Assembly: GCA_964188305.1 (NCBI GenBank)
Contig: OZ076887.1
Length of the DNA stretch: 64,000 bases
Source of the DNA: Podarcis bocagei
Lineage: Eukaryota
Direction: 5' to 3' (one strand)
Below are positions 3,001 through 22,174 of the stretch, one piece after another. A program made the position numbers and the translations under genes. Numbering within the stretch: the stretch's first letter is position 1; the number at the start of each line of letters is the position of its first letter. The notes below the pieces were generated by a model that worked only from the letters and a program-made list of their open reading frames with translations, had not been told where the DNA came from and searched no databases.

Positions 3001-5319
3001 TTCACAGAACTGATGAAGAAAAGCATGTTCCAGTTCTCCGTCCACCCAAATATCTGGAACTCTGGATTTGCACATTGGTCGGGATGCAGGGGAGTTCCCA
3101 CCCACAGCATTAATATTTGCAGCTTGTGCTGTCCCGTTAAGTACCCATCGCTGATGTTCTAGATTCCTTCGTGCTATATTTACAAATATTCATCACACTT
3201 TCTGCTCGCACTGAAGGAATATAAAAACACTTAATTATGTCCTCATCTGGCAAGCACCTGCAATCAACATCAGCCACTTTAATATTAGGAAATACAGCGG
3301 TCACTGACAACTAAATCACAGCAGATTATCTTCTCAACATGCAAACTGCTATGTCCAATTCACAGAGTAGCTGGCTGCATTTCTGTGAAGTCACATCGTC
3401 TGGCACAAGGAGCTTGCACAGAAAGTGAGCAAAAATCAGCCAGCATACCACAAGCAAACTGTCTACTAGCTCATAAAAGATCAATAGAAACTCCTGCTCC
3501 TTGACAAGTCTTTGAAGTGATGCCTCTTGGACTGGCTGGAATCCTGTGTAATCGACAATATGTAAACTCAGCAGAACTGAGTGGGGAGCAGATGGGAGGA
3601 GACAACTGCCTGAAAAGGCACATCATCTTTCCCCCTCTTTCTCACATTCAAACAAAATCAGATGATTTGTAGTCTACTCTGTAGAAGTCTCTGTAAAAAA
3701 AGGGTGTAAAAATAAAAAAGGTAACCTCAGTCAGGAGCTCCTTATGCATTCCACTACATTCAGAGACTTTCCTATCAATATTACAGGTACTGGTAGCAAC
3801 ATTGATAAAGGCCCTGATCTGCTATCGAGGGAAAGTTCCTTCCCAATTCAACTCCATTAAGAGCTCATATGTTTTCCTCCTACCAGTTGTAAACCCTTGT
3901 TTATTCACAGTTTCCAAGATTCCCTTGGAACAGAGAAATAAAGACGAACTATCAAGAATTGAAAGAACTCAAGCCAGATCTTTCCAAATATGTTTTCCCC
4001 CCAGCAACATCTGGGAGAGCCAAAGGTTCCCCACAGCTGGACTAAGGAGCAAGGTGGGGCACCATGCATATTCTAACTGATATACTTCAGCATCCAATTA
4101 AGATTTAAAAGGCAGAGAAAGACATGCAAGGGAGGAAAGGTAACCAAGTTAAAGAAAGTGGATTCTATGGGGAAGTTGTGGCAAAGCCATTCTCATAGTA
4201 ATGCTTATTGCTAGGCCTACAAATATATTTGGGAGAAGACTTAAGATTGCTTCCCACCATTGCCAACATGGTCACAGGTATGGACTACCACTGAATAAGA
4301 CCAAAGGGAAGGAAGAGCATATAGAAAAGAGCAGGTAAGGTGAAGCAGGACCACCAAGGGACAGAGAGAGGGAAGAAGCAGAGACCAAGGAAAAGAAAGC
4401 AGACAAAGCTGGCTCGGAAAGGAAAGCTCTGTCTGGCATTCACCCATCTATTCAGAAATAACCCATCTCATCTGCAGTATCAATTTCCATGCACATGCCA
4501 ACCATTTGATGGCATATTCATAATAATAGCTAAAGGTTTAAAGCTTAATATTTCAAATCATAGTTAAGAGACAGTGAAGTACCTATACCTCCTACAAAAC
4601 CAAAGCTGAGTGGCCAAGAGCTGATATCAGAAATCATTCGATTAGGAGCTAATTCGCTCTATGTAATTACCCTGCACAACCGCAGGGACTCAGAACATTT
4701 TCACTTTCAAACACAATAACCTGACCTATGGGACAACTGTAATTCCAGTACTGTTATCCGTTTAGTTATTCATGCTTTTTAAGTTCCTCAGAAATACCAA
4801 ATGATATTCTACTGCACTTTTTAAATTTAACTAAAAAAAATGTTTGTTTAAATCATACCACATATTTAGGGTAGCAAGATTAGTTGTTCAAGGTCTTACC
4901 TAGGGAATTAATGTGTTGTTTTGTTATGGCATTGTCCCTCATCTTATGAAAACAGATGCATGTCTTTATTGAAAGCACATTAGGAATTACTAGTTGCTCC
5001 CCACAACGATTAAAGCAGACATTAAGGAAGCAAACCCTAACTGCCAAAGAGAAAACAACAAAAAGCTGAAATGCACCCAGAGTGATAAGCTCAGCCACCT
5101 TCCTTTCCACAAAAGGAATGACACCTGCAGCAATAAAAAGCAGAAGCAGACAGAAAAATGAGGAGGGAAATCATAATTATATTAAAATTGCCCTTTTACA
5201 TATGAAAGACTTCTAGCATTGGTTGCAAAGTTAATGCATTTAATATAGGGCAGCTGAACAGAAAAACGTGGTCAACAAACTGAAACCAAAAGAGTGAATG
5301 CCTGAATAAAGAGAAGTAC

Positions 5320-5651: not shown

Positions 5652-6164
5652 GTGTATGGAGTACTCTGAGAGGGGAAAGAAAGGATCTAAACACTTATTT
5701 CACTATTATTAAATAAAGGCACCACATAATACCAGTAACTCTGACTACATTGTACTTCACATATTAAGATAACACTAGGACATTAAAATACCAACATTAC
5801 CATTTACACAGATAAAAATGGAATTTCCCCCCAGTTTCACTGCATGAAATAGGAAACAAACCAGTCAATAATGAGAAAATAATTTTCAAATTATGGATTT
5901 GTAAAGAAAGCATACTTCTGTTCTGAAACAGATTTCCACCACACACACACTGCATTAACCTAATGCCACACTGTGGGCAAAAAAGATGTTATAAGGCTTG
6001 CTTTCAGATTAGACATTTGTTGGTTTTCTGCCCAGAAAGTAGAGTGAAGTGAAATTCCAAACACAGCAACTAAAAGCAACCCAAACATCTAATGGACTGG
6101 GAAGGGGAGAGGATCTACAGGGAACATCTTCCATTGATGTTCTAACATTTGCACTGGCTTACTA

Positions 6165-18219: not shown

Positions 18220-19248
18220 ATAGAGGGGAAGGAAACAGCTGCAGTCGCCTGCGGTTCCTGCGCAATGTTTGCCATCTTGCCAAAGGTTGCAGGCAGCTTT
18301 ACCTGCAGCAATTGCATATTGATTGCCCTCTTAAAAAACAAAGTCCAGCAACTGGAGGAACGTGTAGCTACACTCCAAAGAATTAGAGAGCTAGAGCTCT
18401 TCTTGGAAGCAACAGAGCACACAGTCTCCACCAAGGAGGAGACAGGGGACTCCCCTGAGAAGGAGGCTAGTTCACCAACACAGGAGCCAGATATATGGAG
18501 AAACGTGACTCAAAGAAGTAGGAGGCCCAGGGTTCGCTCTGATTGTTTAGAAATACACAATCGCTTTGAGGTCCTCTCCCCTAGCATGGAAGACGAAGAG
18601 CAGACTCCATTTGAGGATCTCTCCCTCATTACAGTCGATCAGGTATGTGAAGACGAGCAGCAAAGTCAGTCCTCAGGGAATGTGTAGGCGACCTTGGAAC
18701 GGACAGCTCACGGAAGAACCCCGACCAAACCTAAAAGGAGGCGTGTAGTGGTGATAGGGGATTCCCTACTGAGGGGAACAGAAGCAGTGATCTGTGGGCC
18801 TGACAAGATGTCTCGGGAAGTGTGCTGTCTCCCTGGGACTAAGATCCAAGATGTAACTGAACGACTGCAAGGAATCATAAAACCCACTGACAAATACCCC
18901 CTCCTCTTGGTTCATGTGGGAACCAATGACACTGCAAGCAATAGCCTCCAGAAGATCAAAAGGGACTACGAGGCTCTGGGCAGGAAATTGAAGCAATTAA
19001 ATGCACAAATTGTCATCTCATCTGTCCCCCCAGTTGAACGACGTGGCCCAGGGAGAGAGGGAAAAATTGTGGAAGTGAGCAGCTGGCTTCACAAATGGTG
19101 TAAACAGGAACGGTTTGGATTCTTAGATCACGGACTGCAGTTTCTTGAAGATGGACTTCTGGCAAGCGATGGGCTGCACCTCACAACGGTTGGGAGAAAT
19201 GTTTTTGCCAAAAATCTCAGAAACCTCATCAGGAGGGCTTTAAACTGA
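18220..19248 (+). pseudogene. CR1 ORF1 (CxxC..CxxC zinc motif, coiled coil, SGNH esterase), interrupted by TAG at 18685
   Basis: CGSC/CSNC, VIGDSLLR, HVGTND and DGLHL motifs; ORFs 18265-18687 and 18694-19248 share a frame; the start codon may be mutated to ATA at 18220. Confidence 0.88.
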
Positions 19249-19253
19249 CTAAT

Positions 19254-22174
19254 GTGGGGGAGGGAGACAGTGCTCCTGAAGGTAGGAGTCTATCAATTGA
19301 TGAAGATGATCATCCAAATATCATAGACCAAATGGAGCAAACAGCACGCAGACCTAGTGGTGGGAGGAAAAAATCCTTAAATAAGAGACACGGGGGAATG
19401 ATTAATGGACTTCAATGTCTGTACACTAATGCGCAAAGCATGGGAAATAAACAAGGTGAGCTTGAGCTCTTGGTACAGCAAACTAAATATGACATAATAG
19501 GCATCACTGAAACCTGGTGGGATAAGTCCCACGATTGGAATGTAATAATGGAGGGATACAATCTATTTCAGAGAAACAGACCAGACAAGAAAGGAGGAGG
19601 AGTGGCGTTGTATGTCAGGGATGTGTATACCTGTGAAGAGATCCAAGATTTAGAACCTCAAAGCCAAAGTGAGAGCATTTGGGTCAAAATTAAGGGAGAG
19701 AAGAATAACAGTGACCTCATTGTGGGAGTTTACTATAGATCCCCAAGCCAAATGGAGGACATAGATGATGCCTTCCTGGAACAGATGGCCAAGCATGCAA
19801 AAGGAAGGGAGATAGTAGTAATGGGGGACTTCAATTACCCGGATATTTGTTGGATGTCAAACTCAGCCAAGAGCATAAGGTCAAACAGATTCCTCACTGG
19901 CCTTGCAGACAACTTCATTGTCCAGAAAGTGGGAGAAGCAACAAGAGGAACAGCCATTTTAGATCTGGTCCTAACCAATGTTGATGACCTGGTTAGTGGG
20001 GTAGAAGTGGAAGGATCATTAGGCGTGAGTGATCATGCTCTTCTGAAGTTTACTATACAGCGGAAAGGAGCAGCCAAGCATACTAGGACTCAATTTCTTG
20101 ACTTTAAGAAAGCCGACTTCATAAAACTTAGGGAAGTGCTGGGTGAGATCCCATGGACAGTAATACTAAAAGGAAAGGGAGTTCATGATGGCTGGGAGTT
20201 TGTTAAGAGGGAGATAGTAAAAGCACAACTTCAGGCAATACCAATGAGACGGAAACATGGAAGGTGCCTAAAGAAGCCAGGGTGGCTATCTAAAGAACTT
20301 TTAACTGAGTTAAGATTAAAAAAGGATGTGTACAAAAAATGGAAAAGGGGGGAAACCACCAAAGAGGAATTCAAACAAATAGCCAGCACATGTAGACACA
20401 AAGTCAGAAAAGCTAAAGCACAGAATGAACTCAGGCTTGCTAGAGAGGTTAAAAGCAACAAAAAAGGCTTTTATGGGTATGTCTGTAGCAAAAGGAAGAA
20501 CAAAGAAACAGTGGGGTCACTCAGAGGAGAAGATGGTGAAATGCAAACAGGGGACACAGAAAGGGCTGAACTCCTCAATGCCTTCTTTGCCTCAGTCTTC
20601 TCCGATAAAGAAAACAATGCCCGACTTGAAGAATTTGGAGCAAATGATTCAGCAGAGGAAACACAGCCCAGAATAACTAAGGAGACAGTACAAGTATACT
20701 TGGCTAGTTTAGATGTATTCAAGTCTCCAGGGCCAGATGAACTGCATCCAAGAGTATTAAAAGAACTGGCAGATGTGATCTCAGAACCACTGGCAGTCAT
20801 CTTTGAGAATTCCTGGAGAACAGGCGAAGTCCCGGCAGACTGGAGGAGGGCAAATGTTGTCCCTATTCAAAAAGGGGGAAAGAGAGGACCCAAATAATTA
20901 CCGCCCAGTCAGTCTGACATCAATACCAGGGAAGATTCTGGAGCAGATCATTAAGCAAACAGTCTGTGAGCACCTAGAAAGGAATGCTGTGATCACCAAT
21001 AGTCAGCATGGATTTCTGAAAAATAAGTCATGTCAGACTTACCTGATCTCGTTTTTTTGCCAGAATTACAAGCCTGGTAGATGAAGGGAACGCAGTGGAT
21101 GTAGCCTACCTTGATTTCAGCAAGGCATTCGACAAGGTGCCCCATGATATTCTTGTAAAGAAGCTGGTAAAATGCGGTCTTGACTATGCTACCACTCAGT
21201 GGATTTGTAACTGGCTGACTGACCGAACCCAAAGGGTGCTCATCAATGGTTCCTCTTCATCCTGGAGAAGAGTGACTAGTGGGGTGCCACAGGGTTCTGT
21301 CTTGGGCCCGGTCTTATTCAACATCTTTATCAACGACTTGGATGATGGACTCAAGGGCATCCTGATCAAATTTGCAGATGACACCAAACTGGGAGGGGTG
21401 GCTAACACCCCAGAGGACAGGATCACACTTCAAAACGACCTTGACAGATTAGAGAACTGGGCAAAAACAAACAAGATGAATTTTAACAGGGAGAAATGTA
21501 AAGTATTGCACTTGGGCAAAAAAAATGAGAGGCACAAATACAAGATGGGTGACACCTGGCTTGAGAGCAGTACATGTGAAAAGGATCTAGGAGTCTTGGT
21601 TGACCACAAACTTGACATGAGCCAACAGTGTGACGCGGCAGCTAAAAAAGCCAATGCAATTCTAGGCTGCATCAATAGGAGTATAGCATCTATATCAAGG
21701 GAAGTAATAGTGCCACTGTATTCTGCTTTGGTCAGACCTCACCTGGAGTACCGTGTCCAGTTCTGGGCACCACAGTTCAAGAAGGACACTGACAAACTGG
21801 AACGTGTCCAGAGGAGGGCAACCAAAATGGTCAAAGGCCTGGAAACGATGCCTTATGAGGAACGGCTAAGGGAGCTGGGCATGTTTAGCCTGGAGAAGAG
21901 GAGGTTAAGGGGTGATATGATAGCCATGTTCAAATATATAAAAGGATGTCACATAGAGGAGGGAGAAAGGTTGTTTTCTGCTGCTCCAGAGAAGCGGACA
22001 CGGAGCAATGGATCCAAACTACAAGAAAGAAGATTCCACCTAAACATTAGGAAGAACTTCCTGACAGTAAGAGCTGTTCGACAGTGGAATTTGCTGCCAA
22101 GGAGTGTGGTGGAGTCTCCTTCTTTGGAGGTCTTTAAGCAGAGGCTTGACAACCATATGTCAGGAGTGCTCTGA
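19254..22174 (+). pseudogene. CR1 ORF2 (APE endonuclease + reverse transcriptase) with two frameshifts (~20866, ~21058)
   Basis: [26 protein letters not shown] and KFADD motifs across ORFs 19254-20897, 20803-21084 and 21095-22174. Confidence 0.95.

What the first reader, a model, noticed from the sequence alone, without database searches (positions are those of the whole stretch)
19149..19300. Candidate -1 programmed ribosomal frameshift joining CR1 ORF1 to ORF2
Seen: ORF1 ends GCT TTA AAC TGA, placing the heptamer U_UUA_AAC (19239-19245) in exact X_XXY_YYZ register just before the stop. ORF2 is in the -1 frame and open from 19149 through the site (TTT AAA CTG ACT AAT GTG GGG GAG...). About 10 nt downstream is a G-rich segment that can fold (GGGAG/CTCCT with AGAC/GTCT as a possible pseudoknot, or the CTCCT-GAAGGT-AGGAG hairpin). 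Established: UUUAAAC is the slippery site of coronaviruses, whereas L1 ORF2 is made by termination-reinitiation. Inference: this LINE may make a gag-pol-like ORF1-ORF2 fusion (esterase-endonuclease-RT). My recollection that amniote CR1 ORF1s often end in ALN* would make the signal conserved, but this needs checking, as does whether it has been reported. An in-frame AUG at ~19332 offers an alternative route to ORF2.
Basis: partly seen in the sequence, partly recalled or inferred. Interest (0 to 1): 0.75.

Follow-up and report, generated by a model that had tools for sequence, protein, structure and literature searches.

The report
Conserved -1 frameshift site in CR1
The two genes of this lizard CR1 jumping element are joined by a coronavirus-type slippery sequence that is kept letter for letter in CR1 elements of lizards, snakes, turtles, frogs and birds, which suggests these very common LINEs make their endonuclease/reverse transcriptase as a frameshift fusion to the first protein; no protein evidence exists yet.

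Summary
In this decayed but nearly full-length lizard CR1 LINE, ORF1 (esterase) ends GCT TTA AAC TGA. T_TTA_AAC (19239-19245) therefore sits in X_XXY_YYZ register directly before the stop, and ORF2 (endonuclease/RT) is in the -1 frame.

It is not chance. I compared 15 CR1 families (lizard, snake, two turtles, frog, ostrich, hummingbird, other bird-like; median 57% nt identity):
- Of 56 conserved degenerate codon columns, only the last three ORF1 codons show no synonymous variation.
- The stop always follows the heptamer immediately.
- ORF2 is always in the -1 frame and open from the heptamer to the endonuclease.
- 7 of 12 families have no AUG before the endonuclease motif.
- 99 of 169 ORF1 homologues end ALN.
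- A variable 10-nt spacer precedes a conserved G-tract.

Best reading (about 0.7): a conserved -1 ribosomal frameshift that makes an ORF1-ORF2 fusion, with an unusual stimulator or none. I found no published report in the open-access library. The scan noted the same signal earlier on other copies in this genome (s1-347482, s1-345182). Nothing has been tested at the protein level.

The parts
18265..19248 (+). CR1 ORF1 (coiled-coil/zinc-finger-like N part plus SGNH/GDSL esterase), ending RRALN-stop. It is interrupted in this copy by an in-frame stop at 18685-18687.
   Evidence: Translation. Pfam Lipase_GDSL_2. PDB 4c1b match. Homologues. The stop is private to this copy: the family majority has C at 18685.
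19239..19245 (+). Slippery heptamer T_TTA_AAC in X_XXY_YYZ register of ORF1; proposed site of tandem -1 tRNA slippage.
   Evidence: Identical in 15 of 15 CR1 family representatives and in 48 of 65 copies not selected for it. Its three codons are the only invariant-codon columns among 56.
19246..19248 (+). ORF1 stop codon (TGA) directly abutting the heptamer.
   Evidence: A stop (TAG, TGA or TAA) immediately follows the heptamer in 15 of 15 families and in 59 of 65 copies.
19249..19255 (+). Variable part of the spacer. With the stop codon it makes a constant 10-nt distance from the heptamer to the G-tract.
   Evidence: Positions +4 to +10 are variable, but the length is constant in 14 of 15 families.
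19256..19266 (+). Conserved G-tract (GGGGG-A-GGG-A-G), the only conserved element 3' of the site. It is a candidate frameshift stimulator or a protein/ribosome contact. It also encodes G-E-G in the -1 frame.
   Evidence: Positions +11 to +15 and +18/+19 are G in 13-15 of 15 families. The first G is the third base of a codon whose amino acid varies. No conserved pairing partner was found.
19149..20897 (+). ORF2 reading frame (-1 relative to ORF1), open from 19149. It holds a linker FKLTNVGEGD..., the endonuclease N-terminal motif near 19410-19451, and the endonuclease domain. It ends at a frame break in this copy.
   Evidence: Pfam Exo_endo_phos.
19332..19334 (+).
   Evidence: first M at codon 31. 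The position is not conserved: families with an AUG have it at codons 5, 22, 27, 28 or 31, and 7 of 12 families have none before the endonuclease motif.
19273..19288 (+). Not conserved and not above chance.
   Evidence: window MFE -15.6 kcal/mol, z = +0.83. (best hairpin/pseudoknot -7.4, 34 of 60 shuffles as good). Absent in other families.
21095..22174 (+). Reverse-transcriptase part of ORF2, in a different frame from 19254-20897 because this copy has decayed.
   Evidence: Pfam RVT_1.

Best explanation
The ORF1/ORF2 junction of CR1 LINEs is a conserved -1 programmed ribosomal frameshift site.

Proposed mechanism: most ribosomes translating ORF1 read ...R-A-L-N and terminate at the stop that abuts the heptamer, which yields free esterase-type ORF1p. 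A minority slip back one base, with tRNA-Leu moving from UUA to UUU and tRNA-Asn from AAC to AAA. They then continue in the -1 frame (window: ...ALN-LTNVGEGD...) through a 33-62 codon linker into the endonuclease/reverse transcriptase. The product is a gag-pol-like ORF1-ORF2 fusion at a low, fixed ratio.

Shown: the heptamer, its register, the abutting stop, the -1 relation, the open linker, the lack of a conserved ORF2 start codon, and nucleotide-level (synonymous-site) conservation across tetrapod CR1 families.

Inferred: that ribosomes actually shift there, and what stimulates the shift. The only conserved 3' element is an apparently unstructured G-tract exactly 10 nt downstream. The stimulator may therefore be a bound protein, a contact with the ribosome, or nothing beyond the heptamer and the adjacent stop.
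For: 1. Register and frame in the window.

2. The DNA of 15 families carries GCT TTA AAC plus a stop, with ORF2 at -1. The families are the window lizard, the snake Erythrolamprus, the turtles Caretta and Pelodiscus, the frog Dendrobates, ostrich, the hummingbird Calypte, a contaminant contig, and seven bird-like metagenome families.

3. These families share only 49-82% (median 57%) nucleotide identity over the last 150 ORF1 codons. Of 56 codon columns with a conserved degenerate amino acid, only three use a single codon, and those are exactly the heptamer codons. TTA is 6% of Leu codons elsewhere.

4. The -1 frame is closed 1-31 codons upstream of TTT (1-2 codons in seven of the bird-like families), so any shift must occur at the heptamer.

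5. The -1 frame is open from the heptamer to the endonuclease motif in all 12 families with data, while the other two frames carry 2-10 stops there. ORF2 runs 967 to more than 1002 codons from the heptamer in apparently intact copies (Caretta, Pelodiscus, Dendrobates, Calypte).

6. Seven of 12 families have no AUG before the endonuclease motif.

7. 99 of 169 ORF1 homologues end ALN and 8 more end S/TLN.

8. A constant 10-nt spacer is followed by a conserved G-tract, including a G at the third position of a codon whose amino acid varies.

9. Reads from the lizard genome show no listed substitution at 19198-19319 (79 weaker-supported differences not shown) and no insertion or deletion listed at the site. 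No common DNA or RNA form therefore joins the frames.
Against: - There is no direct evidence of shifting (no reporter, mass-spectrometry or ribosome-profiling data).
- No canonical stimulatory structure was found. The 80 nt downstream never fold better than shuffles (z from -0.8 to +1.9). They are almost unstructured in the intact frog copy and in the snake copy (-5.9 and -4.1 kcal/mol). A crude hairpin/H-type pseudoknot search also shows no excess.
- The 10-nt spacer is longer than the usual 5-9 nt.
- Other LINEs translate ORF2 without frameshifting: L1 by unconventional reinitiation and SART1 by UAAUG coupling (PMC5009743, PMC3894237).
- In the related L2 element ZfL2-1, ORF1p is reported as expendable in cell culture (stated in PMC3880073).
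- Lizard, turtle, ostrich and one bird-like family copies do have an in-frame AUG in the linker.
- The closed-access founding CR1 papers could not be read.
Confidence: 0.7

Rival explanations
1. ORF2 is made by termination-reinitiation or another AUG-independent initiation near the ORF1 stop, as in L1 or SART1. The conserved GGGC-TTTAAAC-stop-N7-G-tract block would then be the cis-signal that holds or repositions the post-termination ribosome, not a slip site. ORF1p and ORF2p would be separate proteins.
For: Precedent in other LINEs (PMC5009743, PMC3894237). The stop codon is always directly at the site. No canonical frameshift-stimulating structure was found. The G-tract is conserved and unexplained. 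ORF1p is reported as expendable in the L2 relative (PMC3880073).
Against: No AUG overlaps or neighbours the stop in any of 15 families. This rival does not predict that the conserved letters form a perfect X_XXY_YYZ heptamer in the ORF1 register in every family. It does not predict that ORF2 is always at -1 rather than +1. It does not predict that the -1 frame is already open through the heptamer.
Confidence: 0.18
2. The conserved block is a nucleic-acid signal unrelated to translation. It could be an internal TATA-like promoter (TTTAAA) for a subgenomic ORF2 RNA, a protein-binding or packaging site, or a reverse-transcription signal. The frame relation would then be incidental.
For: The block shows nucleotide-level conservation that extends to the non-coding-looking G-tract. 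No RNA structure was found.
Against: Incidental frame relations would not be -1 with an open linker in 12 of 12 families. A subgenomic RNA would still need a start codon, which 7 of 12 families lack. RNA reads give no pile-up of 5' ends just downstream of the site (table 6), though depth is low.
Confidence: 0.07
3. There is no signal. ORF1p simply needs the C-terminal residues Ala-Leu-Asn, and the codons match by shared ancestry, codon bias or chance.
For: ALN is conserved at the protein level.
Against: All 53 other conserved degenerate codon columns vary synonymously among the same sequences. TTA is a rare Leu codon in these ORFs (6%), and family divergence is near saturation. This rival explains neither the fixed stop position, nor the -1 ORF2 without a start codon, nor the G-tract.
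Confidence: 0.03

Closest known systems
Coronavirus/arterivirus ORF1a-ORF1b -1 PRF (U_UUA_AAC plus H-type pseudoknot)
   Same: The heptamer U_UUA_AAC is identical and in the same register. The downstream polymerase-type ORF is in the -1 frame without its own start. Synonymous sites are strongly conserved.
   Different: No conserved pseudoknot or hairpin was found. The spacer is 10 nt to a G-tract. The 0-frame stop abuts the heptamer. The host is a nuclear LINE RNA, not a viral genome. There is no homology of the flanks (no Rfam frameshift family matched).
Retroviral and LTR-retrotransposon gag-pol -1 frameshifting (HIV-1, RSV, MMTV, PEG10)
   Same: The logic is the same: an abundant upstream structural or accessory protein, with a rare fusion to the enzyme set by slip efficiency. 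The slip site lies at the end of the upstream ORF.
   Different: CR1 is a non-LTR element with no gag, protease or LTRs. ORF1p is an esterase-type protein. Apart from the shift inside HeT-A gag (PMC5009743), the recoding review I read lists no ORF1-ORF2 frameshift fusion for non-LTR elements.
LINE ORF2 translation by reinitiation (human L1 unconventional AUG-independent reinitiation; SART1 UAAUG coupling)
   Same: The RNA is a bicistronic LINE RNA. ORF2 lacks a required AUG. The ORF1 stop lies at or near the ORF2 start (PMC5009743, PMC3894237).
   Different: CR1 has a perfect in-register slippery heptamer, a fixed -1 relation and an ORF2 frame open through the site. None of these is a feature of L1 or SART1. 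No AUG overlaps the stop.
Protein-stimulated -1 PRF (arterivirus nsp2TF: C-rich motif about 11 nt downstream bound by nsp1beta/PCBP; cardiovirus 2A). Recalled from my own knowledge, not checked here.
   Same: A conserved, apparently unstructured sequence motif sits at a fixed distance of about 10-11 nt 3' of the shift site, in place of a stable structure.
   Different: The motif is G-rich rather than C-rich. No binding protein is known. The resemblance is only a lead.

Membership tests
Canonical -1 programmed ribosomal frameshift cassette | X_XXY_YYZ slippery heptamer in the register of the upstream ORF | tested here: met
   T_TTA_AAC at 19239-19245 in the ORF1 register. The same is true in 15 of 15 families.
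Canonical -1 programmed ribosomal frameshift cassette | Downstream ORF in the -1 frame, overlapping the site, with no obligatory start codon of its own | tested here: met
   ORF2 is at -1 in all families. The linker is open in 12 of 12, and 7 of 12 have no AUG before the endonuclease motif.
Canonical -1 programmed ribosomal frameshift cassette | Conservation of the heptamer at synonymous sites across diverged relatives | tested here: met
   Only 3 of 56 conserved degenerate codon columns are invariant, and they are the heptamer codons. Median family identity is 57%.
Canonical -1 programmed ribosomal frameshift cassette | Stable stimulatory hairpin or pseudoknot starting 5-9 nt downstream | tested here: not met
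   MFE z-scores range from -0.8 to +1.9 in 14 families, and the frog and snake regions are nearly unstructured. The pairing partner of the G-tract differs between families. The pseudoknot enumeration is not above shuffles. No Rfam frameshift element matched. These are predictions only; a structure could still exist.
Canonical -1 programmed ribosomal frameshift cassette | Demonstrated trans-frame protein or measured frameshift efficiency | not testable with these tools
   Needs a reporter assay, mass spectrometry or ribosome profiling.
CR1-clade LINE with esterase-type ORF1 | ORF1 with an SGNH/GDSL esterase domain | tested here: met
   Pfam PF13472 E 6e-9. PDB 4c1b ZfL2-1 ORF1p E 2e-21. Homologues named SGNH esterase from turtles, lizards, frogs and birds.
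CR1-clade LINE with esterase-type ORF1 | ORF2 with an apurinic-type endonuclease followed by a reverse transcriptase | tested here: met
   Pfam Exo_endo_phos and RVT_1.
CR1-clade LINE with esterase-type ORF1 | CR1-type 3' end (hairpin plus short microsatellite, no poly-A) | not tested
   The 3' end of the window copy was not examined.
Termination-reinitiation coupling (SART1/calicivirus type) | Start codon overlapping or next to the upstream stop (e.g. UAAUG) | tested here: not met
   No AUG lies at or next to the stop in 15 families.
Protein-stimulated -1 PRF (arterivirus/cardiovirus type) | Conserved unstructured motif about 10-14 nt 3' of the shift site | tested here: met
   A G-tract lies at +11 to +21 with a constant spacer and no conserved fold.
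Protein-stimulated -1 PRF (arterivirus/cardiovirus type) | A trans-acting protein that binds the motif and is required for shifting | not testable with these tools
   No candidate was tested.

The most novel reading that the evidence does not exclude
CR1 LINEs, the dominant retrotransposons of birds and most reptiles, may obligatorily make ORF2p as an esterase-endonuclease-RT fusion through a -1 frameshift older than the frog-amniote split. The stimulator would not be an RNA fold but the conserved, unstructured G-tract 10 nt downstream, acting through a bound protein (host G-tract binder or ORF1p itself) or a direct ribosome contact. That would be a cellular, structure-independent frameshift switch that sets and possibly regulates LINE activity.
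Probability: 0.2. Interest if true: 0.9.

Novelty: new variant of a known kind. Interest (0 to 1): 0.78.

Why it matters
How LINE ORF2 is translated is a long-standing open question, and the accepted models are reinitiation-type. CR1 is the main LINE of birds, crocodilians, turtles and many squamates.

A frameshift fusion would matter in several ways:
- It would change how CR1 ORF2 is annotated. Gene callers now start it at arbitrary downstream codons.
- It would fix the ORF1p:ORF2p ratio by slip efficiency.
- It would tether the enzyme physically to ORF1p, which is relevant to cis-preference and membrane targeting by the esterase.
- It would make CR1 a possible target of host factors that restrict -1 frameshifting.
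- It would provide a natural vertebrate frameshift site that appears to work without a stable RNA structure.

The prediction can be tested directly with a short reporter.

Tried and rejected
- **Downstream structure.** Per-family MFE folds, base-pair probabilities of the G-tract, z-scores against shuffles and a home-made hairpin/H-type pseudoknot enumeration showed no conserved partner and no excess stability.
- **Long-range partner for the G-tract**. A pyrimidine tract about 213-225 nt upstream, which encodes the FSSILP motif, is complementary in about 9 of 15 families. Its codons vary synonymously and there is no covariation, so I treat it as a by-product of coding.
- **G-quadruplex.** Most families have only two G-runs of 3 or more near the site, so this was rejected as a general explanation.
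- **Rfam scan of the junction**. Only a sub-threshold snoRNA hit on the other strand.
- **Wider taxa.** Scans of bacterial/archaeal genome contigs and viral contigs with the ORF1 profile found nothing. Fish, L2-clade and invertebrate relatives could not be sampled, so the signal's reach beyond tetrapod CR1 is unknown. I did not reproduce the earlier scan note's echinoderm-like relative.
- **L004 as a counter-example.** It has TTA CGA TAG and ORF2 at +1. Its close relative L005 has the normal heptamer, and L004 carries an 11-nt insertion in the linker. It is therefore a decayed copy, not a lineage with another strategy.
- **Literature.** Eight full-text searches and nine papers read gave no report of frameshifting in CR1. 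Kapitonov & Jurka 2003 was not held. The 1997 Haas and Kajikawa CR1 papers were not in the library, so prior mention there cannot be excluded.
- **RNA reads**. They cover the element at low depth on both strands and show neither element-specific transcription nor splicing.
Only natural copies were compared.
Full report
**What is in the window.** Positions 18265-22174 (+) hold a nearly full-length CR1 LINE.
- ORF1 (18265-19248) has a C-terminal SGNH/GDSL esterase domain. Evidence: Pfam PF13472, PDB 4c1b, the ZfL2-1 ORF1p esterase, at E 2e-21.
- ORF2 carries an apurinic-type endonuclease (19254-20897) and a reverse transcriptase (21095-22174).
- The copy is dead. ORF1 has an in-frame stop at 18685-18687, and ORF2 changes frame between 20897 and 21095.
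- Reads from the same species show that the stop at 18685 is private to this copy; essentially all family reads have C there.

**Check of the observation.**
- ORF1 ends GCT TTA AAC TGA, so T_TTA_AAC (19239-19245) is in X_XXY_YYZ register.
- ORF2 is in the -1 frame, open from 19149, and reads FKLTNVGEGD... through the site.
- The first ORF2-frame AUG is at 19332.

**Is it conserved?**

Protein level:
- A word-based protein search with the esterase part of ORF1 found homologues in turtles, dendrobatid frogs, lizards and bird-like metagenome contigs. Almost all untruncated ones end RALN.
- A profile search added many bird orders, a snake, a pleurodire turtle and more lizards. Of 169 proteins, 99 end ALN and 8 end SLN or TLN.

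DNA level:
- I fetched the DNA for twelve proteins: Caretta, Dendrobates, Pelodiscus, Erythrolamprus, Struthio, Calypte, one eukaryotic contig inside a 'Klebsiella' assembly, and several metagenome contigs.
- One metagenome scan returned 80 loci, nearly all from one host-rich JGI sample with bird-like CR1 families.
- Of 65 junction-bearing copies chosen only by ORF1 protein similarity, 48 carry exactly TTTAAAC. Fourteen of the other 17 differ by a single base, as expected for dead copies. 59 have a stop codon directly after the heptamer.

**Synonymous-site test.**
- I took one natural copy from each of 15 families and aligned the last 150 ORF1 codons through the protein alignment.
- The families share 49-82% (median 57%) nucleotide identity.
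- There are 56 columns where at least 12 of 15 share a degenerate amino acid. In 53 of them several synonymous codons are used.
- The only three columns with a single codon are the last three: GCT 15/15, TTA 15/15, AAC 15/15.
- Elsewhere in these ORFs, TTA is 6% of Leu codons, GCT 27% of Ala codons and AAC 62% of Asn codons (the first version with 12 families is).

**Frame logic.**
- In every family ORF2 lies in the -1 frame.
- That frame is closed by a stop 1-31 codons upstream of TTT (1-2 codons in seven of the bird-like families, 5 in the turtles). A ribosome coming from ORF1 can therefore only enter it within the last few ORF1 codons, where the heptamer is the only slippery pattern.
- From the heptamer to the first endonuclease motif (L-x-C-x-Y-T-N-A) the -1 frame is open in all 12 families with data (33-62 codons). 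The other two frames carry 2-10 stops over the same stretch.
- In four apparently intact copies ORF2 runs 967 to more than 1002 codons from the heptamer.
- Seven of 12 families have no AUG between the heptamer and the endonuclease motif. In the other five the AUG sits at different places (codons 5, 22, 27, 28, 31). The window's AUG at 19332 is therefore not a conserved start.

**Context of the site.** Anchored on the heptamer, positions -10 to +1 (GGGC TTTAAAC T) are identical in 15 of 15 families.
- The stop is TAG (12 families), TGA (2) or TAA (1).
- Positions +4 to +10 vary freely, but their length is constant.
- Positions +11 to +15 are G in 13-15 families, +16 is A in 13, and +18/+19 are G in all 15.
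- The first G of the run is the third base of a -1 frame codon whose amino acid varies (V, P, S, K, L, M, R, H). The constraint is therefore at least partly on the RNA.
- In the -1 frame the tract encodes G-E-G, and a loose FKLxxxGEGD(Q)SP similarity continues for a few codons.

**No conserved fold.**
- Per-family MFE structures differ.
- The most probable partner of the G-tract lies anywhere from +30 to +140, depending on the family.
- The 80 nt downstream never fold better than dinucleotide shuffles (z from -0.8 to +1.9). In the intact frog copy and in the snake copy they are nearly unstructured (-5.9 and -4.1 kcal/mol).
- A simple enumeration of hairpins and H-type pseudoknots starting 5-13 nt after the site also shows no excess.
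- Rfam has no match.

**Reads.**
- DNA contigs and RNA reads of the same species were laid on 18265-20300 at 90% likeness or more.
- They show many positions where this copy differs from the family. None is listed between 19198 and 19319, although the table is truncated to the best-supported differences.
- There are no insertions or deletions and no RNA joints.
- The frames are thus not joined by a common DNA variant, by transcript slippage or by splicing. The window copy represents its family at the junction.
- RNA coverage is low and on both strands, so it says little about expression.

**Interpretation.** The best explanation is a conserved -1 ribosomal frameshift. It gives an ORF1-ORF2 fusion at low frequency, with free ORF1p as the main product. 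Tandem slippage predicts the junction peptide ...RRALN-LTNVGEGD... in the window.
- In favour: the exact heptamer in register, synonymous-site invariance, the obligatory -1 relation, the short overlap window, the open linker and the missing start codon.
- Against: the absence of a recognisable stimulatory fold, the 10-nt spacer, the reinitiation precedents in L1 and SART1 (PMC5009743, PMC3894237), and the report that ORF1p is expendable for the L2 relative ZfL2-1 in culture (cited in PMC3880073).
- A slip site alone gives low efficiency, which may be all a LINE needs. Alternatively, the G-tract may act through a bound protein, as the C-rich motif does in arterivirus nsp2TF frameshifting. That parallel comes from my own knowledge and is only a lead.
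- I put the frameshift reading at about 0.7, reinitiation using the conserved block at about 0.18, a non-translational signal at about 0.07, and 'protein constraint or chance' at about 0.03.

**Novelty.**
- Eight full-text searches and nine papers gave no mention of frameshifting at the CR1 ORF1/ORF2 junction. The papers included the 2016 recoding review (PMC5009743), the review of non-LTR protein biogenesis (PMC3894237), the Jockey-superfamily ORF1 survey (PMC4120745), the esterase structure paper (PMC3905857) and the 2026 CR1-group survey (PMC13343379). The recoding review lists only HeT-A gag among non-LTR elements.
- The founding CR1 papers are closed-access and could not be checked.
- Within this scan the same signal was already noted on other copies in this genome (s1-347482, s1-345182). 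My tests were run independently and agree, except that I did not sample beyond tetrapods.

**Limits.**
- Everything here is comparative.
- The bird-like metagenome families come mostly from one sample whose species is unknown.
- Structure predictions cannot exclude a fold that forms only with a partner.

Noticed in passing
window 18685-18687: The in-frame stop that splits ORF1 in this copy is private. Essentially all family reads (DNA and RNA runs) have C instead of T at 18685.
   Followed up: yes
window 20897-21095: ORF2 changes reading frame between the endonuclease piece (19254-20897) and the RT piece (21095-22174). The copy is therefore inactive. The exact indel was not located.
   Followed up: partly
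window 19279-19287; L001 about 5810-5820; L006 about 4098-4108: About 35 nt after the heptamer the turtle copies carry a perfect 5' splice-site consensus (GAG|GTAAGT, CAG|GTAAGT). The lizard has AAG|GTAGGA. No spliced reads were seen in the lizard RNA runs.
   Followed up: partly
L004:1418-1500 versus L005:627-700: One metagenome copy has TTA CGA TAG instead of TTA AAC TAG, plus an 11-nt insertion in the linker that puts ORF2 in the +1 frame. Its close relative L005 has the normal junction. The protein clusters ending SRALR (P0032, P0042) have 22 and 36 members, probably the same host locus seen in many samples.
   Followed up: partly
L092 (contig VIDG01000055.1 of a Klebsiella pneumoniae assembly): A 2.9-kb contig in a bacterial assembly is a vertebrate-type CR1 (esterase ORF1, heptamer, endonuclease ORF2). 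It is eukaryotic contamination annotated as 'SGNH/GDSL hydrolase family protein [Klebsiella pneumoniae]'.
   Followed up: partly
P0030, P0004 (protein search hits): CR1 ORF1 esterase sequences are annotated in public records as 'Replicase polyprotein 1a [Varanus komodoensis]'. One is also part of a 'NUBP1 isoform X1' model in a terrapin. These are likely annotation artefacts.
   Followed up: no
L009-L088 (JGI sample 3300005287, Ga0065711): This 'metagenome' holds hundreds of contigs with bird-like CR1 copies from at least five subfamilies, so it is largely host genome.
   Followed up: no
about 213-225 nt upstream of the heptamer in most families (window about 19020-19035): The pyrimidine-rich codons of the conserved FSS(I/V)(L/P)P motif are complementary to the G-tract in about 9 of 15 families. 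There is no covariation, and the codons vary synonymously, so this is probably coincidence.
   Followed up: partly
window 18265-22174: Runs labelled as at least eight different organisms hold about 80% of the sampled 31-mers of this element. The family (or this insertion) is therefore shared nearly unchanged among related species.
   Followed up: no
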